In this document: positions 479 through 62,504 of the stretch, piece by piece
How the letters are laid out: every line of letters starts with the position of its first letter
How positions within the stretch are numbered: position 1 is the first letter of the stretch
Source: Hydrolagus colliei
Taxonomy: Eukaryota
DNA: 64,000 nt
Assembly (NCBI GenBank): GCA_035084275.1
Contig: CM068757.1
Coordinates: 9,548,001 to 9,612,000, forward strand
Direction: 5' to 3'
The notes under the pieces: model-generated
Told to the model about the DNA's origin: nothing
Database searches by the model: none
Seen by the model: only the letters and a program-made list of their open reading frames with translations
Program-made: the position numbers and the translations under genes

Positions 479-499
479 CATGCTACTTGTGTTTTACAG

Positions 500-38622: not shown

Positions 38623-38722
38623 ATGTTGAGGGGGACAAACTCGGCTATAATGTCCTCACCCGGTGGAGCTGCCAGGGCGCTGACCCTCGTCCTGATCCTC
38701 GGGGCTTGGATTGCAGGATCAG
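38623..38722 (+). CDS. Gene B leader exon MLRGTNSAIMSSPGGAARALTLVLILGAWIAGS
   Basis: ATG at 38623, donor g|gtacag at 38723; nearest leader upstream of the V exon. Confidence 0.75.
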
Positions 38723-41700: not shown

Positions 41701-44700
41701 GGACATGGAGTAGGGTTGCAAAGCTGTGAATGGCCTTGAAAGTGAGGACGGGGATCTTGAATTAGATCCCCTGGGGGATGGGGAGCCAGTGGAGGCGGGC
41801 GAGGGTGGGAGTGATGTGGTCTTGGAGCTTAGTACGGGAGAGTACATGAGCTGCAGAGCTCTGAATAGTCTGGATCTTGTGAAGGGAGGAGCTGGGAAGG
41901 CTGATGAGGAGAGAGTTCCCGTTGTCAAGCCTTGATGTGATCAACGTGTAAACAAGCGTTTCAGCAGCTTGGGGGGTGAGGCAGTGGTGGAATCTGGCAA
42001 TGTTGTTGAGGTGGTGGAAGGCAGTTCCGGTCATGGTGCAGATTTGGGGGAGGAAGGACAGTCCAGGATTGAACAAGACGACCAGATTTCTGACTGACTT
42101 TGAGAGATGGAGAGTACAGCCTTGGTTGGATGCTTTTGTTGCCAGCGCCTGAGGTGTGGAGGTGCTGACACGAGCCAATTAGGAGGGCCTCCGGCTTGTT
42201 GACATTTAGTTGGAGGAAGTTGTCCCTCGTCCAGGAATCAATGTCAGACAGACACGCAGTCAGAAAGCCAGTAGTCCTGGAGTTGAGGGAGGAAGCGGAA
42301 AGGTAGAGTTGGGTGTCATCCGCATACATGTGGAAATTTACCTCATGTGTTCGGATGATGTCACTGAGGGGGAGAATGTAGAGGGTGAAGAGGAGGGGGG
42401 GGGGCAAGGACAGAGCACTGAGGGACGCCACAAGACGTGCGAGGGCTTGTAGAGTGAGTGATTTGAGAGGAAAGAGCGGAGCTGGGAGGCAACTACTCTT
42501 TCAAGGACAGGAGGAATGGAGGTCAGGGAGGACAGGGGTAAAATGGTGACCACAGGCGTGGTTGAACAAGGAGGGTCTTGAGTCTTCCCAAAGACAGCCC
42601 TGGTCAAAATCTCAAACCACATTCTTAACATCTGATGAGCAAAGTCACATGCGCAGCCAAGGAAATTGGGGAAAATATCTTATTGAGAGTTTCTCCACAA
42701 TCACGGCAACTTACCGTGTATGTAACGTGCTTCAGGAGGGTGGCATCTTGGAGCACTTGACAGCGGCAAGATTTCACGCCAACCTGGAGAGAGAGGGGGG
42801 GTGACCGAAAGTGCGGTCAAAGAGAAAAGTCTTCAATTGCAATTTGAAGACGGACAAAAAAGAGTTGAAATGAAGGGATTGAGGCAGCAAACTCCAGAGG
42901 TTCGGAGTATAATGGCTGAAAACACGGCCACTATATATTCAGTTGAGGGGATGAGGCCGTGCAAAGTGACTCAGTTGAGCTATGGCAGTCGGTAGTGGAG
43001 TGGGTGTGCGTAAGCAGATCGCAGAGGTCGGGAGGGATCAGGGTCGGAATTGATTTGCATGTGAGAGGGAGGATCTTGAAATCGATCTGTTCTGCAATAG
43101 GCAGCCAGTGGAGTCTTGCAGGGACTCGGGTAATTGGGGTGCAGAGTCTCAAATGGGTGAGGACATGGGCGGCAGAGTATTGCCTCAACCCGTTATTCTC
43201 TGGATAACCTTCAGGGTACAATTCCATAGGCACAAGCTGTGCATCAGTGCTCTGCCCAAGGGGTCCATTAATTGCAAATGCACACGAGCATGCTGTTTAA
43301 CATTCACCCCTTGGTGTTGTCAACAAACGCATGGGTAGGACTAGATTCTCTTTCTACAATATTCTTGAAGCAGTAGCTCATCCCAACCTATGAATTTTAA
43401 CCTGCTTCTAATCTCAGATAATCAAACCTGCTATTCTGGTGTTTAAAATGCTCAGTTGTCATCAATGTTTTGGAATGCCTGTTGTTTTTACACAGATGCT
43501 TTGGAGATGACAATATTTAAAGAGCCATTGGAGGTCTTATTGAATGAAGATGTTGTCCTCGAATGTAACGTAACTGGCTTCACTGAGCAGGTTCTCAACC
43601 TTGATATTGTTGCTGTTGAGTGGAATTTGGGCTCCAGTCAAGTCTATTCATTTAATGGAGGGGACATTAGTGCAAAAAGAACAGGAGCAAAAATAATGAG
43701 AGAAAACTTGAAGAGTGGAGATGCCTCACTACATCTCCCGAAGGTGCAGATTTCCGATGAGGGCTATTACACGTGCATTGTTTTTGTGACCCCAGAAAAA
43801 GTGGAAAAGCGTTCGTCCATTGTGGTGCTCGGTAAGTGCAGTGAAGCATCTCACGGGGTGTATTGTGCGGTTTGTAATGGTATATTCATAAGATCGGTTG
43901 AGATGAATCTGGTTCTTCAGGCCATCTGAGTTTATCCATCCAAACTTCCCATCCTTCCATCAATTCATCAGGCTATTTTAATGTCCTGGCTGCAAGCACC
44001 CTGCAAGCAAACTGTTCCAGTTATTAATCTTGTGGAGTCCTGTAGCTCAGTGGTTGGGCCACTTGCCTTGCAAGCAGGAGACCTGGGTTCGATTCCAGGC
44101 AGGGTGAACCTTGCGCCAGTTTCTTTACTCCACACGCCTGATAATAATCCCTCAAAAAAAATTGGTCAATTCAATCTACATCTGTTTGTGAGACACTCCT
44201 GTTTGCAATTGGCTTATCACCCACAAAATATACAGACAATTCACTAACAGTATATTCTGTGAAGTGCTTTGAGATGCCTGGAAGACGTGAAAAACCATGA
44301 TATCAAATGCAAGGATTAATCAGACCTTAGATAAAGAAATACTACCTGGTGTCTGTCCTGAAATTGTCCTTTTCAATTTGTTGTCAGACTCCACAACTGT
44401 GAGGCGCTCTGGGTTGCACTCCTTTGTGAAGTGCACTATACTATGAAAAGGCAAGCTGTTGTTGTTAAACCTATTTCCTCTTGTTCTACCAGCTGGATAC
44501 ATAACATTTAGTTTTGGCTTTATTTTTTCAATCCCATTTGAAATGTTTTCTATATATTCCGCTCAGCGCAAGTTATTTTGACATCTCTCAAGACGGAAAA
44601 GACTTCAGATTGTCTCATCGTTGCTCCTAGCCATGGACAATAGAATTTTGCAGAAATATTTGCCCCAAATTGGGGGGTATTTCGGCTTATGATGCAAGGG

Positions 44701-47700
44701 AATTTGGCAAATTTGTGAAAAATTGCAAGGATTTTTGCTATTGAGAGGTACATAGCAACAATGTACTGCCAAGCCATTTTGTTCACTTCATTGATTAAAA
44801 ACTACAGATAAAGAAACAACAACAAAAACAATTTGCATTTATACAGTGCCCTTCACACTTGTTAGCATCCCTGAGTAATCCCAACGCAGGCTTGAATGGG
44901 GAAATGGGCTTTGCTCATTCCCGAGGCCCCGCTGTTGTGACTGTGGGTGTCGCTCTCTCTCACCTGAGTGTGTGTCCCTCTGTGAGTATGCGTCTCAGCG
45001 TCTGTGTGTGTCAGTGTGTGGTGGCGAGCCCCGAGAGGCAGGAGGTGGTGATCTCCTGGAGCCCCCACCCCCAAATCGAGTGGGTCACCCAGGCTTGTTA
45101 AAGGAAGCATTTTTTTTGGCAGCAATTTAACATGTGTTATTTCTTAATGTTTCGTTTTCATCAATGAAATGTAATAATGTAGGTTGGCAGTAAAATATGC
45201 CTCAATAGCACCAATCAATCCCCCGCAGCCCTGCAAATTTCCTCGCAATTTTGGGCAAATATTTGCACAATTTTCTATTGGCCTTGATTATGATAGGGTA
45301 AATAGTAACATGTTATTTCCACTGGTTGGTGAACCAGTAACAAGATAACACAGGTTTAAGCTAACCACAAGAAGAATGCTGGAGATGTACACAATTAGGA
45401 GAGGTTTTTGACAGTTCAAATGGGAAGAAACATTTCCATGAGTTGGGGTGTCAAGTGACTAGGTAGTATAAGTGTCATAAGATGAGTGATAAGAGAGGTT
45501 AGGCAAACATTTGTCACTCCGAGGTGTTGGGGTGTGGAATAGACTGCCACGGAAGGTGGTAAGAGTCATAACAAGAGTAAAAAGCAGAGTCCATTGTGTT
45601 TCCAGATGTTAATATGGGAGGCTTGAAGGGGTTGGGAGAAAAAGAAAACGCAGTGGAATTCAATGAAAAACATGAGTTGAAAGCTAGAGAGAGACTTGAT
45701 GGGCCAAATGGCCACCTTCCGTAATGCAAATTGATACGATTCTGTGAATTGAAGGGGAGGGTAGAAAAAACGTTTCACCAACCAGCTGCTGTGATGTGGA
45801 ACTCTCTGCCGTTATCCATTCTTGAGGCAGAGTCCGTAAATTCTTTCTGATGCGGGATTAGATGCAACAGCTTGTAATTATACAGCACCCCTTGAGCATG
45901 GTAGCCTCCCAGAGCGCTCAAAAAGAGGAAATTTGTGGGAGTGCAAAGGAAAGTGGCATTAGTTGTGTTCATGGTAAGTAAAGCAGCAGTGCATTTGATG
46001 GATGATCGACCTGTTTCTTGCCTGTAACATTCTATCAGACATTTACACAACTTGATAAGGTGCTCTATCAAATGCAAAGATTATTATTTCACAATATTGT
46101 CTTCCAGTTTGCACTCATGAGCCAAATCATCTTTTGTTTGCCCTTCAATTCCCACTCTCCCACCATCATAATTATCATGTCCAAACGAAATATTCCTACA
46201 GTGTGTTAACCACAAAGCTCAGTTAAAACACATTGATTAGCGTAATTGTAATTAACCTCTCTGCTTAAGCAAGCACTGTTACCACTTAAAATTTCTTAGA
46301 TGAACTAGCAATAATTTCTAGGTCTGCAGTACCTCGGGATTTCTAAAGATGAGGTGCAATTCCTGGTTTCCCGTTGCTGAGGCTGGAGTAAGTATGTATG
46401 TTGTGGGGAGAAGATAAAAATGCTGCTCCAACGAAAATATTAATACAGAGCACTTTTGCGATCTCTACAGCTAAGCCAAAGGTTATCTTGTCTCCACATC
46501 ACATCAAAATCAACAATGGTTCAGAGGCCACTTTGACGTGTGATGTTAATGAATTTTACCCTGAGATGCTCAAGATCAGCTGGGTCAAGGTATCGCATGG
46601 TGCGGAGATGCAAATTACAACAGGTATCTTGACACGAGATGTAGTTACCAACAAGGACAGCACGTTCAGTGTTTCCAGCAAGTTGACAATCAGACCAACC
46701 GTGGACGACAATGGTAATCAGTACAGGTGTGTGGTGCAGCACAGAACATTCAGTGATACTCTTACACTGGAGACAGAGCTGACTGTGGTGATTGAGAATC
46801 CACAGGAACCTGCAGGATATGGACCTGGAGCTGTTATTGGAGGTGTAATCGGTGTTGTCCTGATGGTGATTGTGGTCTTTGTTTTAGCGGCACTTTACTT
46901 TTGGAAGAAAACGAAGCAAGGTAAGGATCTTCACAGCCCTAAACAACAACGGCAGACGTGGGGGTGATTTATTATACACTAAATGGTCTTGTGCACATTT
47001 TCTATTAATAGAGAACAGTCAGCTGACACTTGATCAACTGAAATAGATATTATCCTAATGACAGGCAAAAAGTTTATGTCGAGGCCTCTGCTCTCTGGGA
47101 CATTTACCTGAATCTTTTCTAAAGACTTACCTGCTTGATCGTGCTTTTGATCACGAGCAGCATTCCCTGCTTCCTCTTGCCACCTCACTCAGTGATCCAC
47201 ACTGTAAAGTACTTGTAAGGTACTTTGAGATGACATCAAAAGATACTGCATTAGGGCAAATTGTTGTTATAACTGTGGTGATCATTACCCAGGTTTCTTG
47301 AGAGAATTAGAATATTTGATGTTACTTTTTGTATGTTCCACAGCTCCTCCCAAGATCAATGAAATCAACAAACCCACTCGCTTTATACATGGGCAGCGTG
47401 TCGATCTGAGATGGGAAGTGACTGGTTTCAAACCAAAAGAGATAGAGATCATGATATTACTGACGAGGAAAGGAAAACAGCCACTGGAGCTATTTGTCTG
47501 GAAATTCACAAAGAATAAAAATGAAGGTCAGGTTGAAGAAGGTTTTCATCTCCTGAAAACAAAAAATGGATCTGACGGGGATAATTCGTTCTCTGCTGAC
47601 ACCCCACAATGTGATCAGCTCGAAAAAGGGACCTTCAGGGTAAGGTGTCACTTATGGTTCTGTCCTGATGTATCTGAGGACGATGGAGCTCAAATAACAA

Positions 47701-50700
47701 TGCAAGTTCATCACAAGGCTCTGAAACAGCCTCTCAAAAAATCTGTAACATTAGATGTTGAAGGTAAGATTTGCATTGTGCACCTCCCTACCTCCACCTA
47801 ACCACACCCACATGTCAATGTGCAAACAATGGCAAGAAATAAAAACATGGAAATCCGGGGTATTGATCCTTTCTAATAATAAAAAAAAAAAATTTGGTCA
47901 CTCAATCCAGAATGACAGTGTGAAATTGGCTGCCGGGTTACGCCCATAAAATATGCACTCAATACACTTTACAGTGTATTCTGTTGAGTGCTTTGAGACG
48001 TCTCAACAGTGGGATAAGGCACGATATCAAACACAATAATTATTATTATAATTAGAGGAAACAAGGTTATTCACCCCATCGAGCCTATACTGGTGGTCAC
48101 TCATCCACTGGAGCTATCTCCCTGTATCCCAATTTTCTACTCTTCCCGCTTACCCAATGATGAGCTGCTTCAAAACCACTGCAACATTGTTGAGCTCCAA
48201 GAGTTACCTTATGCCCAGTAACCCTGTGTGGTCAGTTGACAGATTGACTCAGTTGGTGACGCTCTCTCCTGTGGGACAGAAGGTCGTCAGTATTTCAATT
48301 GGCATCTGAAAACCTGCCCTTCACCTCTGGCTATATAGAAGCTACCATAATCTCTGTCACTCTTACTGTGTGTCACTCTCTCTTTCGTTCCCTCTCAGCT
48401 TCGGAGAGAGAAGAGAATAGATTGAGAGGAGAAACAAAAGGGGAGAGAGAAGAGAGAGAGACAGGGAGGGAGAAAGAAGAACACATAAAAACACGGACAG
48501 TTTGTGTTCATACAACGTTTATATGAACATGGAAGTTCTCAGACAATAATAGCCTTGCACATGACATATCACCTGATCATGCCTTTGAGACTTCACAGAA
48601 TAAACTGTAAACAGAGGAATGTGGAGTAAGGAAACTTGCACAATATTTCGCCTGCTGGAAATCGTACCCAGGTCTCTCGCTTATGAGCTACAGGACTCCA
48701 CAGAATATACTGTAAAGCAGATTGATTGTGTAATTTGTGTGCGACGAGCAGCAGCCAATTGTGCACAGCAGTGTCACACAAATAGTCATGGATTAAGTGA
48801 CCAATTTATTATTTTAAAATATTTTTGAAGCAATTATTATCCCTGAAGTACAATCTGAGAATCTACTAATAACCAGGTTCCTACATACAGATGGGTAAAC
48901 AGAGGCGTGTGGATCAAGATAATTTAAGGCCCACCATTTCCAGGAATCAAACGAAACCTGAGGTTGAAGTGCGAACGGAATCCAGGGGATCAATGTGAGA
49001 CCCCAGTGTGAGCCCCTAGATTGATTTTATGATTTGTAACTGGACACAGTGTGGCCCGTTGTAGAATTACAGCATAATGTTAATAATGTTTGTGGAGTCC
49101 TGTAGCTCAGTGGTTAGAGCACTCGCCTTACAAGCGAGCGACTTGTGTTCAATTCAAGCATGGTGAAACCTTGGGCAAGTTTCCTTGCTCCACATGCCTG
49201 ATAATAATCCCTCAAAAAAAAATTGGTCATTTTAATCCACAATTATTTGTGGGGCACTGCTGTGCGCAATTGGCTGCCGCAATTCACCCACAGTTAATTC
49301 ACTTTACAGTATATTATGTGCAGTGCTTTGAGATGTCTTGAAGACGTGAGAAGCGCTATATAAAACACAAGGATTATTATTAATAACATGCTACTTGTGT
49401 TTACAGCTCCTCCCACGATGATTGAAATCAACATACCCTCTGGTATTGTGCACGGTGTCAATGTGCCTCTGACATGGGAGGTTAATGGCTTCAACCCACG
49501 GGCCATTGTAATTGCTGTATTGGTGAAGAGGAAAGTGGATCAGGAAGCAAAGCAACTGTTTGATTGGCAGATCCCAGAGAAAGAAAAGCAGCCAATCCCA
49601 CATGATATTAACCCCAGCATTGCTACACAAGTTAACTCCTTCACTGCTGAGGTGGCGACGATTGAAAAGACAGATAAAGGGACTTTCAGTGTGAAGTGCA
49701 GCGTTGCCATGTGTGCTGATGTAATCAGGGATAATGATGCTGAATTCACTGTTGAAGTTAAACATCAGGCTGTGGATAATCCTCTCACTAAAGCTATAAC
49801 ATTATGTGTCGCAGGTAAATTCTACCTCTGTATTTTCTCTCTCTCTCTGGTGCTAATATGTGTGTTGAAGTGCAGCATGCTGCTGTGTGTGTCCCTCTAT
49901 GCTACAATAGTTATTTTTGTTTGTGACAGTGACGTTCTATCACATAGACATCTGTGCCGACAGCCACCCCCCTTCCCCTCTCTATCCAGGCTCAGTGGAT
50001 GACTCTGTCACTTTAAATCGCTCAAACACATTAGCTGAAGTGAACAATGCCATACTAATGCATGTTATTGCTGTTGTGTTTGGGGGCAGCTCTGTTGCAG
50101 GTTGATGGGGAGGTGATGGGCTCTGTGGTAACAGTCCAGCCCAACATCAGCCTGAAATCTCATCTGTTTTCTTGAGAAACTTAAACAAATCGATTTTGAG
50201 ATCCTCAGACTTGCCTACAATTCACTTCTTGCTCTCACACCTCGCTACCTCTCCAATCTGCAAACACCCACTTCTCAACCCACTCCATTCGCTTGCTCAA
50301 ACCTTTGGCATCTTCCTTGACCTGTCCACGAAACTATCGGCAGCCAGGCATTCAACAACGATACCCTGAACCTCTGAAACTCCCTTCCCCAAACTCCAGC
50401 TCGCCCTCCATCTCCATCAATCATTGGATCACAGCTGAAGGTTCTACTCTCTGACCATGTCTACCATCACCTCCCCTCTCTCCCCAGCTCAGTATCAAAC
50501 TACAATATTGCGAAGCTCATCAAGACGTTACCCTGCATGAAAGTTGCTATGTTAAATGGAAGTTGCTATTGTTGAAAGAGTGTGTAACTCTGTCTGAAGC
50601 CTTGCTGCAGATTCTCATTGTAAATTGTGTGTGAGGCTGTGTGGTGTGTCCTGTAACTGGATTTAATCTTTACATGATATTTGTGTTTGTGTTATAGCTC

Positions 50701-53700
50701 CTCCCATAATTACTGAATGGCCGGCAACCCCTGATATGACACATGGTGACACCTCCACTCTGAGTTGGTCAGTGACACGGTTCAATCCACGTCCCATTGT
50801 AATTGCTGTATTACTGAAGAGAAAAGGGGAGTCAAGATCACAGAAGCTGTGTTATTGGCAGATGGAGAAAGAACAACCAGCAGGAAATCAACCAGTAAAC
50901 ATTCCTGTTAGCCATGACACAAAGGATGACTCCATCAATCCAGAGATGGCAACGATTTTACAGGGAACAAATGGGACTTTCAGTATGAAATGCAGTGTTA
51001 CCATAAATGCTGATGTATCCAGGGATGATGGCGCTGAGTTCACTGTTGAAGTTCAACATGACGCTCTGGAGAATCCTCTCACTGAATCTGTAACATTACG
51101 CGTTAAAGGGGGTAAGTGCTGCCTCTGTCTGTTCTCTTCTCTCTCTCCCTCACACATCAGTGTAGAAATATTCAGGTGAAGGTGATGATTTTACAAACAG
51201 AGGAGTTTGAAATGATCTGTTAATCTCCAGAGTGAGCTTTGCGGCTGTGTGTGAAGAGAGGCCACATTATTCAGGGCTCCACAGTCACATGGTCAAAATT
51301 ATTTTGTACACAATAAATAATCTGGTGATTTCTGACAAATTTGTAACGTTAAAATATAAAATCGAATGTGTATATATGCACTCATATGGGTGTCAGCTCC
51401 GAGCATGAAGCACTCTAACCTCTCGTCCATAAGGTTGTGGGTTCACATCACATCAGGATCTGAACCTACAGTCGAGTAGGGACTTGTAATGAGGAAATTA
51501 AATGATAATATCTTAAAGAATTTGATTGTTGACAATGGTTTCAATTTCAAATAATAATTCCCTTTATTACCATCTAGGATGACACTGCAGTGTGTGCTGG
51601 GGGGGCTCTGTAATGCTGGAGTCTGTTATTTCAGATGTTAAACCATGATCTCATCTGGGTGTTCAGCTAAATGGCCGGCAACCCCTGATAAGACACACTT
51701 CAGCACTAAAACAATTTCTCCAGTGTTGTGTCCTTCATCTCTTGCTCTATGTGTATGTCTAGCTCTCTCTCTGTCTCCCTTTCCCCCTTTCTCTCTTCCT
51801 TTCTCTTGTAATCAGTCGGGATAAAATGTAGAATTTGAAATTATTTATTTGTCAAAAGGCCAGTGTGCACCCTGTCTGGGGGCAGCTCTTGCAGGTTACT
51901 GGAGGCTTAGACAGGCTGAGTGCTTATGATGGAGTTTAACATCACTCTACAGCTCCAGCCTGGTGTCCTCTGCCATGACTTGCAGGCTTTTCACTCGTTT
52001 CTGTGGATTCAGTTTCCAATTTGTATCTGACACAGACATGGACTTGAATGTTTTTATGTGGATTTGTCATTTTGTTTTGTAGTTCCTCCTAAAATTACAT
52101 TTCCAAATCAAAAGAAAATGAAACATGGTAAGAATGCTGAGCTGCAATGGACAGTGACTGGGTTCACTCCTGGGAAGATCTCGATTGTTTCCAGTCTTCG
52201 AAGGAAAGGAGAGGAAGTAAGACAACTGTTTCACTGGGAAATTCCAAATAAGGAAGCATTTCAAAGGAAGAGAATCCCCTGGAATCTTGAGGACAAATCA
52301 GAGAGATCCAACAATGTTGCCTCCTTCACTGCAGTGGTGCCTAAATGTGAACACGACACCAAAGAAGGAACCTTCAGAGTAAATTGCAAAATCAACATGA
52401 CTCCTGATGTGTCCACGGATGATGGAGCTGAATTAATTGTTCAGGTTCAGCATGAGGAATTTCCTGAGTTTGTCACTGACAGTTTAAAAATAAACATTGC
52501 TGGAGGTAGGTTCTGCCGTCAATATTGTGTCCTCTCTGTCCCATATGCTCTGTGGCAGTGTTTAGAATAAAGTAACAGTTTCCTCCACAATGGTTCAGCA
52601 ACTGAGATCACCACTCAGTGAAACCCAGAGCCTCTCAGTCCAGAAGGTGGCAGGATATGGCATCTGAGAAATCTCGTCATAGTGCTTAAGATTATCCAAA
52701 CCAGAGAGTTCATATGTGCCATCTACATGTGGAAATTTCCCTTTTTCCAGAATGGAATGCTCACAGTAGTAAACAAACGTGGATCAAGAACTTGACTAAT
52801 AGGACTACCTCAGGATTGATTTTACTCCGATATTGTCAAGTGCGTTATTGTTCAAACAGAGAGTGAGTTTGTCCCAGTGTCCTGGCCAACGATCCCCATT
52901 ATAAAATCTGTCACTTAATTCATCGCTATTTACAAAAGGTATGCATCCTGTTTACCTGTTACCAGAGAGCATCAGCTGCACGTTGGCAAGATACAAAGCT
53001 TGGAGGTCACAGAGTATGTGCTGGAATACTGTGGGAATTTAAGAAGGGAAATGCGCATAGTTTGCTATTTCTAGTTAGGACCACACCACCTGTTAAGGCT
53101 TTGGTTTGCAGGGTTAACAAGACCTGAATAGGTAGAATCCATGCTCTCAGTGACTGGTCTTGCTGTCCCAGGCCTGCTGATGAGCCAGGCCGACTGGTTT
53201 ATAATGCTGTGTACAAGTTGGCTGACACATTTGACTTCAAGTACAGAGCCAGTGAACTTCACACACAAATTTTGTGATGCGCTCTGAGACGTCTCAGTGA
53301 TGTGATAAGGTGTTATATCAGTTGCAAGAATTATAAGGATTATTAGAATGTTGTAGCCATCTTATCTCAGAGGAGATACTGCACACCTCTGTTCCCCCTC
53401 CCCCCAGGTGGGCTGAGTTGAGCTGAGGCAGTAGCTGTGCAGCTCTGTTTGGTCTCTGTGGGTGAATTGTCTGCCCACATTGATAGTCTGGGCTGAGACA
53501 TGAGAAACCCTGGTAATTAATAGAGAAAATAATCCAAGCTCACCTCCTGATCAGCACCTTGGATACCTCTCACCTTCACAATATCGGACAGGTCAGATCT
53601 CTGCAGCTGGGAAGTACACACACCACACAGAGGGTTTACAGGCTGAGTAACATTATTACAGAGTGTATGTTATACAGGACTCATTTACAGTTTGGTTCCA

Positions 53701-56700
53701 CTGGGTGCTGTGTTCATGAGTCCGTCCGGCACAGTTGGCAGTGCTCTTGTCTCTGTGTCAGAAGGTATTGAGTTCAAGCCCCACATTGACACACTGGCTG
53801 TCACTCCAGTGCAGTGCTGCAATGCTTATATTGTGTTTCTGTTTGATAGCTCCTCCTCAAATTTGTGGACCTTATCCACCCGGGAAAAGTCTGCATGCTG
53901 TGAAAGACACAGTGACATGTGTAGTTATTGGTTTCACTCCTGGGAAAATGACCATAATTTTCAGCCTGAAGAGGAACGGGCAGCAACAGCAAATACAACG
54001 ACTGTTTCACTGGGAAATTCCCAACAAGGAAATATTTCAAGAGTCGATAGGAGGAGCTTTTCCTCTGCAGGACCGATCGGATAGAGACAATAAAGATGCG
54101 TCCTTCACTGCTTTGGTGCCAAAGTGTGAACCTCTTGGCGATGGGACTTTCAGAGTAATTTGCATCATTGATATGATTCCTGATATTGATATGGATAATG
54201 GAGCTGAATTATCTGTTGAGGTTCATCATGATGTTATTGTTGGCTCTCTCACTAATACTGCAATATTACTCATTACTCCAGGTAGGTTCCTCGATCATTG
54301 TTGTGTCTCTCTGTCTCTGTGACAATGTTTAGGACATTGTAATGATTTGCTCCCCGATGGCCCAGCAGCTGAGGTCATTGCTCAGTACAGGGTTGAGTCG
54401 AGTCTCTCAGGCCAGAAGCTCTGAGATTCGAGTTCTGGTCTGGGAGCTGATCTGAGCTGACCTGGGCCAGTAGCTGTGCTGGTCCGTTTGTATGTCAGCC
54501 TGGAGGTTTGGTAGCACTTTTGCCTCTGACTCAGAAGGTTGTGAGTTTAAGCCCCACGTCAGGACTTGGAATCACATCGTCTAAGCTGACACTCACTCCA
54601 ACGCAGTGCTGGATGTCTGTGCATTATCGGTGGTGCCGTCCGTTAAATGAGATGTTAAACTGACGTTCTACCCGCTAGTTCAGGTAGACATTGTAGATCC
54701 CATAGCGCTATTCAAAAAGAAAAGGGAAGTTTCTTCAATCCCACAACTAACATAGGTCACTCATCCCATGGTTGTTTCTGGGACATTACAGTATGCAAAC
54801 TGGTTGCTGTGTTCGCCAACAAAATATGCAGTGAATCCACTTCACAGTATAACCTGTGTAGCACTTTGAGACATAATAAGGTCTATTTCAAATGATAGGA
54901 TATTAGAGAATATAATCAAAGCTCACGATCACCACAGTGGATATCTCTCACCTCAGATGTATCAGGTCTCAGATGAGATCTCTGCAACTGGGAAGCAACA
55001 GCCTTAATGCAGTGTGCACAGTATGCAGAGGATAAGACCATAAGATTTAGGAGCAGCAGTAGGCCATTAGGCCTCTCGAGCCTGCCACGCCATTCAATAA
55101 GATCATGGCTGATGTTCTAATCTAACTCCACCTGCCCACCTTATCCCTTAAAACCTTTATTCATAAGAAATCTATCAGGATGTAAGTACTCGGTGTACAT
55201 TTTACAGGATGTTGTAGTTTTTTCTGGGGCAGCTCTATTGCAGGTTGATGGAGAGATGTTGGGGCTCGGTGGTCGTGGTGCAGCTTAACGCCAGGCTACA
55301 GCATTGTCTGCTGTCCTCAGGAATAATGCGCACATCTGTCTGAAGGTTTGCAGCAGATTTGGATTGTAAATATTGTGTGAAGCAATGCGTGGGTGGTGCA
55401 GTGTGTCCTGTAACGGGAATATAATCTACATTTGCTGCTTGTGTTTGTTTTATAGCTTCTCCCACAATTACTAAAATCCAGGTCCCCCCGAATATTAAGC
55501 ACGGTGCCACCTACACTCTGAATTGGTCAGTGACTGGGTTCCATCCATGGGCCATTGTAATTGGTGTAAAACTGAAGAGAGGAGGGGAGACGAAAGAAAA
55601 GAAGCTGTTCAAGTGGAAGACGACAGAGAAAATTCCACCACCTGGAGTGATGCCAGTAAGGATCCCTATTGAATCCCAATCAAAGGATGATCTCATCACT
55701 TCTGAGGAGGCGATGATTATACAGGAGAAAACTGGCAATTTCAGAGTGAACTGCAGTGTTACCATGGTTCCTGATCTATCCAGCGATGATGGCGCTGAGT
55801 TCATTGTTGAAGTTAAACATCAGAACAAAGCGCTCACCGAAAAAGTAACATTACACGTTAAAGGCGGTAAGTGCTGACACTGTCTGGTCTCCACACTCTC
55901 TCCCTTGCACATCACTGTAGAAATGTTCTGCTGAATGCAATGACTTTAACAACGAGAAGAGTTTGAAATGATCTGTAAGTCTCGAGTGAACATTGAGGCT
56001 GTGTGTGACGAGAGGGCTTGATTCTATTCATTTATTATTAATCCATGACTGTTTGTGGGACACTGCCATACGCAATTGGCTGCTGCCTTTTGCCCACAAA
56101 TATACAGTGAATTCACTTTGCAGTACCGTATATCTCCGCATATAAGGCGCACTTTTTTTCAGGTCGGAAGATCTCGAAAGTGGGGGGTGCGCCCTATACA
56201 CAGGTACAAGCAATTTTGAGCCTCGGAGATACAGTAAACAGGAGGGGCGGCCGGCGCGCTGTCAGCCGGGGTTTGGTCAGTGTCCGGCGGGGGTTGGGAG
56301 GAGCGGGTGACGGGGCTTCGACCTCGGCCGCCCGGGCAGCGGCAGCAGCAGCGGACTTCAGTGCTGTGCATACCTTCTGCCGAACCCAGTCTGCCTCACT
56401 CCCTGCCGCTCTCCCCCTCTCTCTCTCCCGGGCTGCCGGCCTGCCGCTCTCCCCCCCCTCGCTCTCCTGGGCTGATGGCCTGCCTCTCTCCCCCCCTCTC
56501 TCTCCCGGGCTGCCGGCTGCCTCTCTCTCTCTCTCTCTCCCTCTCTCTCTCTCTCCCGGGCTGCCGGCCTGCCTCTCCCTCTCTCTCTCCCGGGCTGACG
56601 GCCTGCCTCTCTCCCTCTCTCCCTCCCTGGCTACCTGGCTGCCTGCCTCTCTCTCTCTCTCTCTCCCTACCTCCCTTCTGCCGACAATATCATTGAAAAT

Positions 56701-59700
56701 GTTTCCGTTTTTTTTCACCAAGAAAAGGTCAAAAACGAGGGGTGCGCCTTATACGCGGAGATATATGGTACATTCTGTGAAGAGCTTTGAGATGTCTAGA
56801 AGACATGAGAAGCACTGTATCAAATGCATTATTATTATAAGTCACGTCACAGGCAGATGTTCAATGGGGATTTATTATTTTATACATGGTGGTAAATAAT
56901 CTGGTGATTTCTAGGAAATATTTAATATTAAAACACGATATCTTACACCATTATATATGCATAACTATGGGTGTCAGCTCTGAGCATGTTATCCTGTTGT
57001 CCCTTGTCCAGAAGGTTGTGGGTTCACATCATATCAGGACCTGAACTTCCAGTCTAGTGCAGAGACTTGTAATAAGGAAATGAGTGGATCATATCTTATA
57101 AGGAATTTAATTGTTGATGGTTTCAATTTCAAATGACAGTTTCCTTTATTGTAGACTTTCTCAAGTCAATGGATATACTAGTACTAGGCAGTATAGTATC
57201 TAGATAAAGTAGTGCCTAACTCAGGAGAAGCAACCGTGATCAGTTACCCATCGCTTGGGAGAACTCAGGCATTCTCTTACTTATCAGTTTATTTTCCTCG
57301 TCTCCCTCTCTCTCCCTCTCTCTCTCTCCCACGTTAGCAGTCCATACTTATATGCAGCCTGTTTCAGGAATGTCTCATCGTTAACTCCAAACGTTCCAAG
57401 TTTGTTCCCAGGTGCAAGGTACATAACTGAAATTATAAACACCCGTACATTAAGTTTGCTCATCTTGCTCATTATGCACTTGATGTACCAAGAAACAATA
57501 TCTGTGAGATCAGTCAGCTTTTTAAGATTGGGGATTTGAACAAAATCAACAGTATCTGTGAGTTGAATTAGCTCGTGTCTCCTGAAAGTTGTTTTCTCAC
57601 ACTCAATTTTCAGTTATTCTTTACCCAAGATTACGCCTTGTACGAGAATCAAACCTGACTTGAGACACAAGTGCTCTAACCACTGCCCTACAGGACTAAA
57701 ACAATCTTGAATTTTGGTGTAGATCCATATCATGTCTAGAGGACTATCTCAAAGTGCCTCACAAGATTCAAAGTGAAATGGAGTAACTGTATCAGTAGAC
57801 AAATGTGGCTTCACGATAGCACACAGCAATGTCTCACAAACAGTGATGGAGTGAGTGATCAATTGTATTTGGGTATTTGATGGCCAAAACACCAGAAGAA
57901 CTTTGTTCGCTTTTTGAGTAATGCCACATGTGCTTTAATGTCCACCGGAAGAGGCAGGTGGTACTTCGGATTAACATCCATTCGTGGGATGTATCTGTGC
58001 AGCTGGGAAGGAACAGCCTTAATATTGTCAACACATTGTGTAGAGGATATAAAGACTTCAAGTAACATATTACAGTGTGAACGTTTTACAGGATGATGAT
58101 GCAGTTGTGTCTGGGGGCAGCTCTGTTGCAGGTTGATGGGGAGGGGATGGGGTTCTGTGGTCAGGGTGTAGAAATATCACTGTAGAAATATCGAGGTGAA
58201 GAATGGCTTTATTCACAGCTTCACACTCACATGGTCAAAGGAGGTTTATTATATTGTACACAGTAAATAATTGGTGATTTCTGACAAGAATGTAATATTA
58301 TAATATTAAAACCATTATATATGCATGTACTGTATATGGATGTGAGCTCAGAGCATGTAGCATCTCTTGTCAGAAGGTTGTGGGATCGCATCACATCAGG
58401 ACCTGAACTTACAGTCTGGCATGACACTGTGCAGTGTGTGCTGGGGGAGGCCTGTAATCCTGGAGGTGCCATCTTTTGGTTGAGGTGTTGAACCGCTGTC
58501 CCGTCTGCCTGTTCAGCTAAACGTTAAAATTCCTACAGCACGATCAAAAAGAGAAGGGAGTTTCTCCCATTGTCTTGGCCTCTATATATATCTCTCCGGC
58601 TGTGTGTGCGAATCTCTCTCTTTGTGTCTCTCTATCGCTATATCTCTCATTATCTCGCTCATTCCCACTTTCTTCTTTTCTCTCGTATTTATTTAGGGAA
58701 AAATTTAGAACTTTATTATTCATTTGAATAATGAAATTATTAAATTATTCATTTGTTGAAAGGCCAGTGTTCACCCTGTCTGAGGGCAGCTATTGTATGT
58801 TACTGGAGGCTCAGACAGGCTGTGTGCTAATGATATAGTTTAACATCACTCTGCACCTCCAGCCTGGTGCCTTCTGCCATGACATGCAGGCTTTTCACTT
58901 GTTTCTGTGGATTTTGTTTCTAGTTTGAGTCTGACACAGACATAGACTAGAAATGTGGTTGTCTATAGCACACAGGTGTTTCCCACAAATATTCCCGGAT
59001 TGAGTGACCAGATTATTATATTTGTTTAGCTATTATGTGCTGCAGAGAGTGATTGGCCAATCCATGAACCATCTAACATCTGCTTACTGCTGGGTAAACA
59101 GAAGCATGTGGAATAATGAAATTTTTGCCCTCGTTAAGTGAAAATTTCATTAGGCGGGAGGGAGGTCCCTACTGTGTTTCTGTGCATGAAGATAATCAGT
59201 TTCATTCCCAGTAATGCCTTGCTCTTAGCCTAGCGCCTAGCGCTACTAATTGCGGTGTACCAACGACGCATAAGGCAGGTAGAACTGCTATTGGAGAGAG
59301 ACTGGGAGTTAGGGAATGGCGATATGGGATTTTTGCGGATATGGATATATCGGTTTGCTCATACCTGCTTAAACCGATCTATCGAGTTTTTGTACTGCGC
59401 ATGCGCGTGCATTCGAAGTGCGCGTGCATTGATGGCGCGCGCGCATTTATGGTGCGCGCTCAGTCGCGGTGCGCGCGCATTGACGGTGCGTCCGCACTGA
59501 CGATGCGCGCACAGTCGCGGTGCACGCACATTTCGAAATGCGTGCTCTAGGTCCAGAAAGTTTGTAATGTTGTTGTCAAGGTCTGTTGATTTATACGATG
59601 TTGTTTGCTCCCTACCTCCCCCTCTCCTTCTCTCCCTCCTCTCCTCTCTCCTTCNNNNNNNNNNNNNNNNNNNNNNNNNNNNNNNNNNNNNNNNNNNNNN

Positions 59701-62504
59701 NNNNNNNNNNNNNNNNNNNNNNNNNNNNNNNNNNNNNNNNNNNNNNNNNNNNNNNNNNNNNNNNNNNNNNNNNNNNNNNNNNNNNNNNNNNNNNNNNNNN
59801 NNNNNNNNNNNNNNNNNNNNNNNNNNNNNNNNNNNNNNNNNNNNNNNNNNNNNNNNNNNNNNNNNNNNNNNNNNNNNNNNTCCCCTCGCTCCTTCTCTCC
59901 CTCCTTTCCCCCTCTCCTTCTCTCCCTCCCTCTCCTCTCTTCCTCTCTCCTTCTCTCCCAACTTTCCCCCTCTCCTTATCTCCCTCCACCTCTAAACACA
60001 AAATAGAACACACACACACCAAAAACAAAATCTAGAGATTTATTCTCCTCCATTTCTTGCTTGAAACTAGCATGTAATGTCCACGTGTAAATGAGATCTA
60101 TTACAATAGAAAAGAGAGAGACAGACAGTCTGACTGTTAGTTAGAAGCCAGATTATCACTGCTGTGTGTGTCTGACTAGACCCACACATAGAAACAGTGA
60201 TAATCTGGCTTCTAACTCTCTCCCACACAAAAATAACACTTACAGCCACAAAATGCCACTTATTTTTATGTAGTCTGAAGTCTGAATTAATGTCCTTCGC
60301 CATTGGCAAGCTCTCCTTTGCTATGCAAAAAGTGACAGCGTTCGTGATACTTTGCCACTTTTTGTCCCCTCTCTGGTACAATGTTCTCTCCTCTTAAATA
60401 AAGCAGGAATTGTTTGAGCTGCACTGGCCCCACTACCTGTCGCTTTCTCCGAAGCGCTGGTTCGACTTCCTGCTGTTGTCGACAATGATTTCGCTCTGAG
60501 GGCAGCGTGCTGGGCGGGGTGGTGCTGCTTAATGTGTTGTCGCAGGTTGCTCGTGCTCGAATCAGATGTCTTAACCAAGACCTTGCAAACTGTACATCTA
60601 TACACACCATTACTGACTGCATTGTTTTCAAAGTAGTCCCATACGGGGCTTCTTTTCCCCATGATGAGAAAGGTAAATTTTCAAACTACAATTTTCAGCG
60701 ATGCCACTTTGTTAACACGCCACGACTCACGTCGAGTATACACGGTAAAGTGTGCGCGCGCATCGGATGTGCGTGCCCGTTAATTGTGCGCGCGCACCGA
60801 ATGTACGCGCATTCCATGCTCTAGATCTAGGAGGTTGCAATGCCGGCGACAAGGTAAGCTGGAAAAGATCGCATTACACTGATAATACCAACAATATTGA
60901 TATATTGCCAGGAACGATATTAAAAATATATCGATGTATATTTTTAAAATCGAATCTCTCGATATAACAGTTTTTTTAGAATCACCATATCGGCATACCG
61001 ATCTGAAAATCATATCGGGTTTAATCGAAAAACCGATTAATCGCCGTTCCCTACTGTGAGTGAGATTGTGACAGTGAGAAACTCAGAGAGAGAGAGAGAA
61101 AGAGACACAGAGAGAGAGACTGGGTCAGAGATAGAAATAGAGAGAGAGAGATCGCGACCGAGACAGACAGAGAGAGAGAAAGAGACACAGAGAGAGAAAT
61201 AGAGAGAGAGAGACACACAGAGGGAGACTGAGACAGAGAGAGAGAGAGATGGAGAAAGAGAGAGACAGGGAGAGGGAGAAACAGACAGACAGAGAGAGAG
61301 AATGTAGCTTGTATCGCTTTTGGAAATGATCAAGCCGCCCGCTGCTAGCAGTAAAAGTCTCCGCTGGCTTTTTCACAGTAGCGTCATATAGTTGCCTAGC
61401 ATCCTGCTGCTTAACCTCCTCTCATACTGCACTGCTTTCTCTTGGATTAGGTGGCATGCTGAACTAAGTGTGTGTATGTATGTAGCTTCCTCGACTGAGA
61501 CTGCGCTTGTGTTGCGGAGGCTGCCGGGAGACGAGAAGCGCGCAAAATTTAAACTTTCTTTATAGCGAGCACAGCCTTCACTAAGCGCATGGGGGGGTAC
61601 AAATAGAAACCATCTTTATAGTGAAGTTTCATTAACAGGGCGTGTGTTAAGCGGGGGCTGCCTGAAGTGACACAGGATTCCTTAACATCCACCTGTGGAG
61701 GCAGATAGGACTTTGGTTTAAAATCTCATCTGTGGGACGTGTCTGTCGTGGGAAGGAACAACCTCAATACTGTCAGCACATCGTGCATGTATTGTAAAGA
61801 CTAGTGTAAAGAGTAACAGTGTGAATATTTTACAGGATGTGTAGTTGTGCCTGGGGGCAGCTCTGTTGCAGGTTGATGGGGACGTGATGGGCTCTGTGGT
61901 CAGGGTCCAGCTTAACACCAGCCTGCAACATCGTCTGCTGTCCTCAGCAATAGTGTGCAGCTCTGGATGTCTGAAGCTTTGCTGCAGATTTAGATTGTAA
62001 ATTGTGTGTGAAGCAATGTGTGAGGCAGTGTCGTGTGTCCTGTAGCTGGAATATAATCTTGACATGCTGCTTGTGATTGTTTTGTAGACCCTCCCACAAT
62101 TACTGAAGTCAATATACCCTCTGATATTAAACACGGAGCCCAAACCACTCTGAGCTGGTCAGTGACTGGGTTCAATCCACGGCCCATTGTAATTGGTGTA
62201 TTCCTGAAAGAATGGGAGCAGAACGCACAGCTGCTGTTTTGTTGGCAAACAACAGAGAAAACACAAGCAGAAAGAAAGAAGTCAGTGAAGATTCCAGGAA
62301 GCTCTGACAGAAACAATGTCGCCATCACTTCGAAGGAGGCAACGATTGAACGGGAGGCAACTGGGAATTTCAGGGTGAAGTGCAGTGTTACCATGGTTGC
62401 TGATATATTCAGGGACAATGGTGCCGAGTTCATTATTCAAGTTGAACATCAGGCTATTCTTGGGAAACCTCTCACCAAATCTGTACCACTACACGTTAAA
62501 GGGG
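38623..62504 (+). CDS. NCR3LG1: Gene B (3' partial): B7-H6/NCR3LG1-like type I membrane protein, L-V-C1-TM-(C1-like)x7 or more
   Basis: Ten phase-compatible open exons in order; V and C1 domains resemble B7-H6 (symbol means NCR3LG1-like, not proven orthologue). Confidence 0.8.
39277..41150 (-). mobile_element. 5'-truncated CR1-clade LINE, frameshifted, in intron 1 of gene B
   Basis: ORFs 39472..40089 (GVPPGSVLGP, FVDDTKLGG, FNVGKC, RDLGV), 40192..40539 and 40499..40807 (KSPGPDGLHP); absent from the paralogous block at 28650. Confidence 0.85.
41393..42600 (-). mobile_element. Degenerate L2 LINE (further fragment about 42790-43140)
   Basis: MYADDTQLYL, SRLDNGNSLL and [13 protein letters not shown] in frameshifted ORFs; (AAC)n tail at 41393. 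Confidence 0.8.
43496..43831 (+). CDS. NCR3LG1: Gene B IgV exon, B7-H6-like
   Basis: LNEDVVLECNV...AVEW...[41 protein letters not shown] parallels human B7-H6 as recalled (LNDNVTIFCNI...[41 protein letters not shown]). acacag acceptor, g|gtaagt donor, 336 nt. Confidence 0.9.
45340..45750 (+). mobile_element. CR1 3' fragment
   Basis: Ends in gggccaaatggccaccttcc, the CR1 3' hairpin-type motif also seen (reverse) near 39300. Confidence 0.55.
46471..46920 (+). CDS. NCR3LG1: Gene B IgC1 + transmembrane exon
   Basis: LTCDVNEFYP...ISW...NKDSTFSVSSKL...YRCVVQH, then hydrophobic GAVIGGVIGVVLMVIVVFVLAALYFW and basic KKTKQ; ctctacag acceptor, g|gtaagg donor; 450 nt. Confidence 0.9.
47344..47763 (+). 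CDS. Gene B exon D1, first post-TM C1-derived domain
   Basis: ccacag acceptor, g|gtaaga donor, 420 nt, open; LRWEVTGFKP...FRVRC...QITMQVHH. Confidence 0.85.
49407..49814 (+). CDS. Gene B exon D2
   Basis: 408 nt, open, AG/GT; paralog of 500-907. Confidence 0.85.
50698..51111 (+). CDS. Gene B exon D3
   Basis: 414 nt, open, AG/GT; 9 nt longer than the gene A copy (in-frame). Confidence 0.85.
52083..52505 (+). CDS. Gene B exon D4
   Basis: 423 nt, open, AG/GT. Confidence 0.85.
53850..54281 (+). CDS. Gene B exon D5
   Basis: 432 nt, open, AG/GT. Confidence 0.85.
55456..55866 (+). CDS. Gene B exon D6
   Basis: 411 nt, open, AG/GT. Confidence 0.85.
56126..56768. mobile_element. Complete Tc1/mariner-pogo type MITE inserted in a SINE
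   Basis: TA TSD; TIRs CCGTATATCTCCGCATATAAGGCGCAC / GTGCGCCTTATACGCGGAGATATATGG. Confidence 0.85.
59129..61664 (-). mobile_element. Tigger-like element, gene B copy: left TIR deleted, interrupted by a hAT insertion
   Basis: Junction atttttgccc|tcgttaag removes the left end; right TIR ends at 61664. Confidence 0.8.
59310..61053 (-). mobile_element. Non-autonomous hAT (ZBED1/Ac-like) element with BED zinc-finger remnant; contains N gap 59655-59880
   Basis: 14-bp TIRs TAGGGAATGGCGAT / ATCGCCGTTCCCTA; 8-bp TSD CTGGGAGT/CTGTGAGT. ORF 60321..60662: RSPVWDYF...CTVC...STSNLRQHIKQHHP, continued after a frameshift by KKWQSITNAVTFCIAKESLP. Confidence 0.9.
62088..62504 (+). CDS. Gene B exon D7
   Basis: 417 nt, open, AG/GT; 3 nt shorter than D7a-c (in-frame). 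Confidence 0.85.

What the first reader, a model, noticed from the sequence alone, without database searches (positions are those of the whole stretch)
47344..62504. Post-TM domains have all lost the canonical Ig disulfide and share a new signature
Seen, by aligning to the gene's own C1 (LTCDVNEFYP...ISW...TFSVSSKL...YRCVVQH). The B-strand Cys is Trp in D1-D4, D6 and D7 (LxWxVxxFxP). The F-strand Cys is Val, Met or Ile in all domains (e.g. EFTVEVKH, QITMQVHH). The C-strand Trp is gone. Instead there is an invariant E-strand Cys (FSVKC/FRVxC) and a nearly invariant L(F)xW motif after a basic KR(K) patch. The V and C1 before the TM keep both Cys. Inference: the fold was re-engineered for the reducing cytosol, with Trp filling the core. 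This independently supports the topology and defines a recognisable domain subfamily.
Basis: partly seen in the sequence, partly recalled or inferred. Interest (0 to 1): 0.78.

Follow-up and report, generated by a model that had tools for sequence, protein, structure and literature searches.

The report
Disulfide-free Ig domains behind B7H6-like membrane anchor
A cartilaginous-fish relative of the immune ligand B7-H6 carries, after its membrane anchor, at least seven copies of an old, uncurated antibody-type domain that has lost the usual internal disulfide; whether that loss is an adaptation to the cell interior is not shown.

Summary
Window 47344-62504 holds seven phase-1/phase-1 exons (D1-D7). 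Each encodes a 136-144-aa divergent C1-set Ig domain, directly downstream of a B7-H6/B7-H3-like V exon and a fused C1+TM exon.

The signature is not special to this gene. This "D domain" is the first domain after the TM in non-mammalian B7H6 proteins, from sharks to reptiles. Loss of the F-strand Cys, the E-strand Cys and the C' Trp are old and family-wide. Cys-to-Trp in strand B is a later, recurrent one-base change.

The 15 copies are seven paralogue types in two ~96.5% identical duplicated arrays.

The "re-engineered for the cytosol" inference is only partly supported. Long-form relatives keep full Cys-Trp-Cys triads in two further post-TM domains. Their TM lies on a separate exon, and RefSeq isoforms in three species lack it. 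In this gene the TM is fused to C1 and cannot be skipped in frame.

The assembly gap lies in an intronic, copy-specific repeat insertion.

The parts
43496..43831 (+). V-set Ig exon of the gene. It keeps both canonical Cys and the Trp.
   Evidence: Pfam V-set 9e-9. AG/GT borders and phase 1-1. V+C1 best PDB match is human B7-H6 at 6e-27, with B7-H3 at 3e-26.
46471..46920 (+). Single exon encoding the C1-set domain, the transmembrane helix (46827-46904, GAVIGGVIGVVLMVIVVFVLAALYFW) and the basic stop-transfer KKTKQ. There is no phase-1 donor between C1 and the TM.
   Evidence: Pfam C1-set 1.6e-15. Sequence and donor CAAG|GTAAGG. The same C1+TM fusion occurs in C. milii LOC121850342.
47344..47763 (+). 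D1 exon. Its reading frame begins 5 residues after the TM. B-strand W, F-strand M.
   Evidence: AF2 pLDDT 83.4 with an Ig sandwich. 64% identical to C. milii cm1.
49407..49814 (+). D2 exon (W / V).
   Evidence: 75% identical to cm2.
50698..51111 (+). D3 exon (W / V).
   Evidence: 62% identical to cm3.
52083..52505 (+). D4 exon (W / V). The C. milii orthologue has Cys at the B position.
53850..54281 (+). D5 exon. The B-strand Cys is retained and the F-strand residue is V.
   Evidence: Weak Pfam C1-set hit, 19.1 bits against a cut-off of 21. 58% identical to cm5.
55456..55866 (+). D6 exon. It is D3-like and has a single Cys, the E-strand one.
59297..61052 (.). Copy-specific intronic insertion. 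It contains the assembly gap (N 59655-59880), CT-rich and GC-rich simple repeats, and a BED zinc-finger ORF (60321-60662, minus strand). It is not part of the coding sequence.
62088..62504 (+). D7 exon (D3-like, W / I). It ends in a good donor, so more exons may lie beyond the window.
500..18784 (+). Upstream paralogous array of eight D exons: uD2 500-907, uD3 1792-2196, uD4 3175-3597, uD5 5124-5555, uD6 6738-7148, uD7a 11938-12357, uD7b 15074-15493, uD7c 18365-18784. It belongs to a second gene copy whose V/C1/TM lie outside the window.
38650..38722 (+). Tentative leader exon (MSSPGGAARALTLVLILGAWIAGS, phase-1 donor). It overlaps a repeated element and is not confirmed.
   Evidence: Scan. The repeat context is visible in the ORF lists.

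Best explanation
The region encodes the tail of a cartilaginous-fish paralogue of B7H6 (NCR3LG1). The gene is a co-orthologue of Callorhinchus milii LOC103173843. The protein is type I: a V and a C1 domain outside the cell, one TM helix, then at least seven tandem copies of the 'D domain'.

The D domain is a divergent C1-set Ig domain. It is the first domain after the TM in non-mammalian B7H6 proteins, from sharks to reptiles. It lost the F-strand Cys and the C-strand Trp in the common ancestor of the lineages sampled. It acquired a buried E-strand Cys and a Trp on an added C' strand. It keeps or replaces the B-strand Cys freely; the change to Trp takes one base.

In this gene the ancestral TM exon is fused to the C1 exon, so the TM is constitutive. 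The later canonical domains of the long form are gone, and the D exon has been amplified. D1-D5 are old and have 1:1 orthologues in C. milii. D6 and D7 are recent D3-like copies.

Shown: exon structure, open frame, homology, Ig fold prediction, the signature and its family-wide distribution, orthology, and selective constraint on the fold positions.

Inferred:
- The array lies in the cytosol and folds without any disulfide. W24, C102 and V/I120 would pack the core, and W53 would stand in for the lost C-strand Trp.
- It acts as a rod or pairing scaffold under the membrane. C1-set domains normally work as pairs. D1 is tethered 5 residues from the bilayer, with its basic KRK patch near the inner leaflet. 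This would couple engagement of the B7H6-like ectodomain to intracellular partners.
For: - Splice phases and the open 1237-aa chain.
- 143 of 148 family models with both an ectodomain C1 and a D domain have a TM between them. The median C1-to-D linker is 39 aa.
- Products carrying TM plus D: C. milii V9K7L7 and nurse-shark B7H6; P0015 and P0186.
- D1-D5 are 58-75% identical to cm1-cm5, against 30-49% off the diagonal.
- hhalign against C1: 96.9%, E 2e-10. PDB profile hits are to C-mu and beta-2-microglobulin.
- AF2 pLDDT 83.4, and Foldseek probability 1.0 to Ig domains.
- Signature frequencies across 131 external D domains.
- The E-strand Cys is present whatever the B residue: 84% with B=C, 85% with B=W, 79% with other residues. 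It is therefore not an obligate disulfide partner.
- Single-Cys domains exist.
- Sequons in 22 long-form relatives: 53 observed against 36.8 expected in the ectodomain, with the only two columns that carry a sequon in 8 or more of the 22; 103 against 100 after the TM, with no such column.
- Half-cystines are conserved in post-TM d4, d5 and d6, where the partner Cys is absent.
- There is no phase-1 donor between C1 and the TM here.
- Amino-acid differences between the two arrays avoid family-conserved columns: 4/168 against 67/648, p = 6e-4.
- None of the 15 exons has a stop or a frameshift.
Against: - No transcript or protein data exist for this species. The leader exon and the 3' end of the gene were not found.
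- Long-form relatives keep complete Cys-Trp-Cys triads in post-TM d2 and d3 over the whole taxon range sampled. That is what disulfide-bonded, non-cytosolic Ig domains look like.
- TM-less RefSeq isoforms exist in Bombina, Rana and Heterodontus, so the D domain may also function outside the cytosol.
- pN/pS between the two arrays is 0.97 (24 synonymous and 80 non-synonymous differences), so constraint on most positions is weak.
- The structural roles of W24, C102 and W53 rest on alignment and strand register, not on inspected coordinates.
- The scaffold/pairing function is conjecture.
Confidence: 0.6

Rival explanations
1. The D domains are really extracellular or lumenal modules. The family's working product would be the TM-skipped, secreted V-C1-D-... 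chain, and the TM-containing form would be secondary. The disulfide-free D core would then have nothing to do with the cytosol.
For: In the long-form C. milii gene the TM is a separate 114-nt phase-1/phase-1 exon. RefSeq X1/X2 isoforms of Bombina NCR3LG1 and Rana LOC120917008 differ exactly by the 34- and 37-aa TM segment, and Heterodontus isoform X3 also lacks it. Post-TM d2 and d3 keep the full canonical triad in at least 95% of 22 relatives.
Against: In this gene, and in C. milii LOC121850342, C1 and the TM are one exon, with no in-frame donor that could skip the TM. 143 of 148 models include the TM. The C. milii V9K7L7 and nurse-shark B7H6 products include it. No column after the TM carries a sequon in 8 or more of the 22 relatives. 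The TM-less isoforms are computed models whose read support I could not inspect.
Confidence: 0.17
2. The loss of the disulfide is neutral history rather than adaptation. The F-strand Cys was lost once, long ago. The B-strand Cys drifts to Trp/Phe/Tyr because one base change suffices and the core tolerates it. The 'signature' simply marks descent from one ancestral exon that was later amplified.
For: The F-Cys is absent in 126/131 D domains across all lineages. The B position is C 53, W 22, F 8, Y 3 in first D domains. W and C alternate between orthologues. The 15 copies collapse to seven types, and D6/D7 are recent D3 copies. Disulfide-free extracellular Ig-like domains exist (general knowledge).
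Against: The E-strand Cys (114/131) and C' Trp (120/131) are conserved far above background, so the replacement core is under selection. Differences between the array copies avoid these columns. W predominates in tandemly amplified D copies, 36 of 41, although these are phylogenetically clustered.
Confidence: 0.25
3. The D exons are not a working part of this gene. They would be a separate downstream gene, or decaying duplicated exons, in one or both arrays.
For: pN/pS is 0.97 between the two arrays, and exon divergence is about equal to intron divergence. The leader and terminal exons were not identified. No expression data exist.
Against: All 15 exons are open, with intact AG/GT borders and only in-frame indels. 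About 4-5 stops would be expected among the 104 substitutions if they were neutral (my estimate). Family-conserved columns are spared. The order D1-D5 is conserved with C. milii at 58-75% identity, and the C. milii model joins C1-TM-D1....
Confidence: 0.07

Closest known systems
B7-H6 / NCR3LG1 (human structures 3PV6, 4ZSO, 6YJP; nurse-shark 'B7H6' entry of 1092 aa)
   Same: The V + C1 ectodomain followed by one TM is shared. Human B7-H6 is the best PDB match at 6e-27. The nurse-shark, frog, salamander, turtle and lizard proteins named NCR3LG1/B7H6 carry the same D domain right after the TM.
   Different: Human B7-H6 has a short tail without Ig domains (general knowledge). Long-form non-mammalian B7H6 has one D domain followed by 6-7 more canonical C1-like domains. 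This gene has only D domains (at least seven) and a fused C1+TM exon. B7-H3 scores almost as well as B7-H6 (3e-26), so the ectodomain alone does not fix orthology.
Immunoglobulin C1-set domain (Pfam PF07654; Ig constant, beta-2-microglobulin, MHC alpha-3)
   Same: The motif GFxPxxIxI is shared, as are the E-F region GTFxVxS...D(D/N)G..Y.C.V.H and the exon phase. Homology is supported by hhalign at 96.9% and by profile hits to C-mu and beta-2-microglobulin.
   Different: There is no B-F disulfide and no C-strand Trp. A ~35-residue insertion forms C'/C'' strands, so Foldseek ranks VH/nanobody domains first, with TM-score ~0.55. The domains score below the Pfam gathering threshold. The predicted location is cytosolic, which would be unprecedented for this set.
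Intracellular disulfide-free Ig-like domains of titin, filamin and myosin-binding proteins (I-set / filamin repeats)
   Same: Tandem beta-sandwich modules that fold in a reducing compartment and act as rods or scaffolds. This is the proposed way of working.
   Different: There is no detectable sequence relationship: no Pfam I-set hit for any D domain. Those proteins are not membrane-anchored by an upstream TM and do not derive from C1-set domains.
UrIg2 of elasmobranchs (V + nine C1 domains + C-terminal TM; PMC12227049)
   Same: A shark non-rearranging IgSF gene with a V domain and a long array of C1-type exons. The array was amplified and homogenised by exon duplication. 9DMX appears among the PDB hits of the C1 domain.
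   Different: All UrIg2 Ig domains precede the TM, are extracellular and have the canonical disulfide. Here the array follows the TM and lacks it.

Membership tests
Ig C1-set domain | Ig beta-sandwich fold | tested here: met
   AF2 model of D1: pLDDT 83.4, pTM 0.79, ten strand segments (3 residues or longer) plus an EF-turn helix. Foldseek gives 452 PDB matches with E below 1e-3, and every one of the 50 matches listed is an antibody-type variable domain.
Ig C1-set domain | Significant sequence match to C1-set profiles | tested here: inconclusive
   hhalign against the family's own ectodomain C1 gives 96.9%, E 2e-10. The PDB profile search hits C-mu at 5e-5. Pfam C1-set is below its cut-off: D5 scores 19.1 against 21 bits, and D1, D2 and D4 (the others scanned) have no C1-set hit.
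Ig C1-set domain | Canonical B-strand Cys to F-strand Cys disulfide | tested here: not met
   The F position is V/M/I in 15/15 domains and the B position is W in 13/15. Three domains have only one Cys.
Ig C1-set domain | Invariant C-strand Trp packing on the disulfide | tested here: not met
   The aligned column is I/V/A/G in the window domains, and W in only 7 of 90 external first-D domains.
B7-H6 / NCR3LG1 family | Membrane-distal V-set plus membrane-proximal C1-set ectodomain homologous to B7-H6 | tested here: met
   Pfam V-set 9e-9 and C1-set 1.6e-15. The top PDB hit is human NCR3LG1 at 6e-27, with B7-H3 close behind.
B7-H6 / NCR3LG1 family | Type I single-pass membrane protein | tested here: inconclusive
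   A 26-residue hydrophobic segment followed by KKTK. The signal-peptide exon is only tentatively located. No experimental topology exists.
B7-H6 / NCR3LG1 family | Shares the post-TM D domain with proteins deposited or annotated as B7H6 in non-mammals | tested here: met
   The D profile hits nurse-shark B7H6, Bombina, Ambystoma, Rhinophrynus, Carettochelys, Rhineura and Lacerta NCR3LG1. The window gene is a D-only paralogue, closest to C. milii LOC103173843.
B7-H6 / NCR3LG1 family | Binds an NKp30 (NCR3)-type receptor | not testable with these tools
   This needs binding assays.
Intracellular I-set / titin-type Ig modules | Sequence membership in I-set or filamin-repeat families | tested here: not met
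   No I-set or filamin hit for any D domain at E up to 1. The resemblance is functional only.

The most novel reading that the evidence does not exclude
Non-mammalian B7H6-type genes place an array of C1-set-derived Ig domains downstream of a TM exon that can be skipped in frame. One gene could then put the same Ig array either in the cytosol (TM included) or outside the cell (TM skipped). In the chimaera-type paralogue seen here, the TM has been fused to the C1 exon and the array reduced to amplified D domains. That would make this the first C1-set-derived Ig module committed to the cytosol, with a Trp/Cys core in place of the disulfide.
Probability: 0.35. Interest if true: 0.82.

Novelty: new variant of a known kind. 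Interest (0 to 1): 0.6.

Why it matters
C1-set Ig domains are regarded as a hallmark of extracellular adaptive-immunity molecules such as Ig, TCR, MHC, beta-2-microglobulin and tapasin. A conserved C1-derived domain that always follows a TM helix would extend where this fold is used. The family runs from sharks to reptiles and includes the proteins annotated as B7H6.

It would also mean that the ancestral B7H6 was a far larger molecule than the mammalian one, with an unexplored intracellular or alternatively secreted part.

The D domain is a naturally disulfide-free Ig scaffold with a defined replacement core (B-strand Trp, E-strand Cys, C' Trp). That is of practical interest for antibody-like binders meant to fold inside cells.

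The domain is missed by Pfam and its carriers are mostly labelled 'uncharacterized protein', so a curated profile would improve the annotation of many vertebrate genomes.

Tried and rejected
- Pfam scan of D1, D2, D4 and D5: no family reached its cut-off, only a sub-threshold C1-set hit for D5.
- A B-strand/E-strand alternative disulfide: rejected, because the E-Cys frequency is the same whether B is C, W or another residue.
- A cryptic donor that could skip the TM in this gene: none exists in phase 1 between C1 and the TM.
- A hidden D exon in the gap: unlikely. The gap is estimated at 226 nt against ~415-nt exons, and it lies in an insertion absent from three paralogous units.
- Signal-peptide exon: only one weak candidate, inside a repeat.
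- Terminal exon: not found. D7 ends in a good donor and the window ends 1.5 kb later.
- Exact-product look-ups for P0021 and P0011 found nothing on record. P0002 and P0157 worked.
- Literature: eight full-text searches found no description of post-TM Ig domains in B7H6 (errored). The paper most likely to mention them, Flajnik et al. 2012, Immunogenetics 64:571, is not held, and neither is Ohta & Flajnik 2015. Prior description therefore cannot be excluded.
- The link between W at the B position and amplified or constitutive-TM genes was not pursued as a statistical test, because the cases are phylogenetically clustered and Heterodontus has W together with a TM-less isoform.
- Model coordinates are not exposed, so burial of W24, C102 and W53 could not be measured.
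Full report
**The gap.** The window has two N runs, 7544-7702 and 59655-59880. The second lies between the D6 and D7 exons. It is flanked on both sides by CT-rich simple sequence. It sits inside a 1.76-kb stretch (59297-61052) that has no counterpart in any of the three paralogous repeat units of the upstream array, where the flanks are 20 bp apart. That stretch also carries GC-rich 17-mer repeats and a BED zinc-finger ORF on the minus strand. No exon of the finding crosses the gap. Each D exon is a closed phase-1/phase-1 unit, so reading-frame continuity across the gap does not arise. Physical continuity depends on the scaffold join, and the order D6 then D7 matches uD6 then uD7a in the other array.

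**What is in the sequence.** On the + strand there is a V-set exon (43496-43831). A second exon (46471-46920) encodes a C1-set domain, a 26-residue hydrophobic helix and KKTKQ. Seven further exons of 408-432 nt follow. All nine have AG/GT borders and lengths divisible by three, and they join in phase 1 into an open 1237-residue chain.
- A profile made from four of the domains finds exactly 15 copies in the window, all on the + strand. It also hits the gene's own C1 domain weakly.
- Eight of the copies form a second array at 500-18784. That array is a segmental duplicate: 48910-59131 is about 96.5% identical to 1-10298. Its last unit is triplicated.
- The '15 domains' are therefore seven paralogue types.

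The alignment of the 15 domains shows these features:
- W at the B-strand Cys position in all domains but D5/uD5.
- V, M or I at the F-strand position.
- An invariant Cys in 'F(S/R)VxC'.
- Invariant L50 and W53, with F51 in 14/15.

A profile-profile comparison with 18 ectodomain C1 domains of relatives gives 96.9% probability (E 2e-10). It places W24 on the B-Cys, C102 on the second Ser of the E-strand 'VSS', and position 120 on the F-Cys.

The AF2 model of D1 (pLDDT 83.4) is an Ig sandwich with extra C'/C'' strands. C102 is in the strand before the EF-turn helix, and L50-W53 are in the C' strand. Foldseek matches Ig domains with probability 1.0. D6, uD6 and uD3 contain one Cys only.

**What the domain is.** The profile finds 261 proteins (E up to 1e-3; 142 below 1e-10) among 1.84 billion representatives.
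- In 143 of 148 models that contain both an ectodomain C1 and a D domain, a TM helix lies between them. The D domain starts a few residues after it.
- The carriers come from sharks, rays, chimaeras, sturgeon, bichirs, coelacanth, lungfish, caecilian, salamanders, frogs, turtles and squamates. No teleost, bird or mammal appeared among the carriers whose source could be read.
- Most are labelled 'uncharacterized protein'. Several are labelled NCR3LG1, and a nurse-shark entry of 1092 aa is deposited as B7H6.
- The V+C1 part of the window gene has human B7-H6 as its best solved relative, with B7-H3 close behind.

The D domain is therefore the juxtamembrane, post-TM domain of non-mammalian B7H6-type proteins. 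Pfam does not recognise it.

**Age of the signature.** Frequencies in 131 D domains from other species:

| Feature | Frequency |
|---|---|
| No Cys at the F-strand position | 126/131 |
| E-strand Cys | 114/131 |
| C' Trp | 120/131 |
| B-strand residue, 90 first post-TM domains | C 53, W 22, F 8, Y 3 |
| B-strand residue, 41 additional tandem copies | W 36, C 5 |

- The E-strand Cys is equally frequent whatever the B residue, so it is not half of an alternative disulfide.
- Cys to Trp needs one base change.
- The window's D4 has W where its C. milii orthologue has C.
- The disulfide-free core with E-Cys and C' Trp is therefore old and under selection. The B-strand Trp is a later, repeatable substitution.

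**Orthology and constraint.** C. milii LOC103173843 (1309 aa) has C1-TM-D1...D5 in the same order. Identity is 64, 75, 62, 67 and 58% on the diagonal, against 30-49% elsewhere. Its terminal repeats are D4-like, whereas the window's D6 and D7 are D3-like.

Between the two arrays in the window, pN/pS is 0.97. The amino-acid differences nevertheless avoid family-conserved columns (4/168 against 67/648, p = 6e-4). No exon has a stop or a frameshift. The fold is conserved and the surfaces change quickly.

**Topology: where the interpretation weakens.**

For a cytosolic tail:
- Signal peptides are present in relatives.
- Basic residues follow the TM.
- The TM-D junction is present in independent products.
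- Sequons are enriched only before the TM, and the only columns that carry a sequon in 8 or more of the 22 relatives lie there.
- Several post-TM domains of long-form relatives keep only one of the two canonical Cys.

Against, or at least unexplained:
- In 22 long-form relatives, post-TM domains d2 and d3 keep B-Cys, C-Trp and F-Cys in at least 95% of sequences.
- In the long-form C. milii gene the TM is a separate 114-nt phase-1/phase-1 exon.
- RefSeq isoform pairs in Bombina and Rana differ by exactly that exon. A Heterodontus isoform of a D-repeat gene also lacks the TM segment.

The family may therefore make both a membrane form with an intracellular Ig array and a secreted form. In the window gene, and in C. 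milii LOC121850342, C1 and the TM are one exon with no in-frame donor between them. Here the TM is obligatory and the array is predicted to be cytosolic.

**Verdict.** The claim that the fold was rebuilt for the cytosol, and that this independently proves the topology, goes beyond the evidence.

The best reading (confidence 0.6) is a cytosolic, disulfide-free, C1-derived Ig array that serves as a rod or pairing scaffold behind a B7H6-like ligand. The function is conjecture.

I found no description of these post-TM domains in the searchable literature. The 2012 B7H6 evolution paper could not be read, so prior mention cannot be excluded.

Noticed in passing
window 1-19250 versus 48910-63087: The two D-exon arrays are segmental duplicates at about 93-97% identity. 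The upstream array carries three tandem copies of the D7 unit, spaced ~3.1-3.3 kb apart. Exon divergence is no lower than intron divergence (pN/pS 0.97).
   Followed up: partly
L002 5367-5480 (C. milii LOC103174895); proteins P0183/P0021, P0184/P0046, P0153: In long-form B7H6-type genes the TM is on a separate exon (114 nt, phase 1-1, in C. milii). RefSeq isoform pairs in Bombina and Rana differ by exactly that exon, and a Heterodontus isoform also lacks the TM segment. Skipping it would turn the whole post-TM Ig array into part of a secreted chain.
   Followed up: partly
proteins P0009, P0011, P0016 and 19 other long-form relatives: Post-TM domains d2 and d3 keep the full Cys-Trp-Cys triad. 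Domains d4 and d5 keep only the B-strand Cys, and d6 keeps only the F-strand Cys. These patterns are conserved from chimaera to frogs. A conserved half-cystine without its partner is unexplained.
   Followed up: partly
proteins P0017 (Dendropsophus, 2158 aa) and P0045/P0178 (Xenopus tropicalis LOC101734116): A second frog family has SP-V-C1-C1-TM followed by a long run of C1-like domains (the D profile matches 15 and 10 stretches). Many of those domains have intact canonical Cys pairs. Post-TM Ig arrays are therefore not confined to the B7H6-type genes.
   Followed up: no
proteins P0040, P0104, P0123, P0130, P0146: A few models place a D-type domain directly after several hydrophobic segments rather than after V-C1-TM. 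These could be exon shuffling or chimeric gene models.
   Followed up: no
window 59297-61052: A 1.76-kb insertion specific to this array's D6-D7 intron. It holds the assembly gap, a GC-rich 17-bp tandem repeat, CT-rich tracts and a BED zinc-finger ORF (60321-60662, minus strand; Pfam zf-BED 1.6e-8). It looks like a transposon remnant.
   Followed up: partly
window 39472-40807 (minus strand) and 34382-35383 (plus strand): Reverse-transcriptase fragments (RVT_1) lie between the tentative leader and the V exon. A 333-aa ORF at 34382-35383 has no Pfam match. The whole 19-43 kb interval between the arrays is repeat-rich.
   Followed up: partly
L001 (C. milii scaffold MU249848.1, 5.61-5.74 Mb): The long-form gene LOC103174895, the D-repeat gene LOC121850342 and an 'NCR3LG1-like' gene lie within about 130 kb of each other on one C. 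milii scaffold. LOC103173843 and LOC103174893 each list a longest contig of the same length. The two architectures therefore sit in one gene cluster.
   Followed up: no
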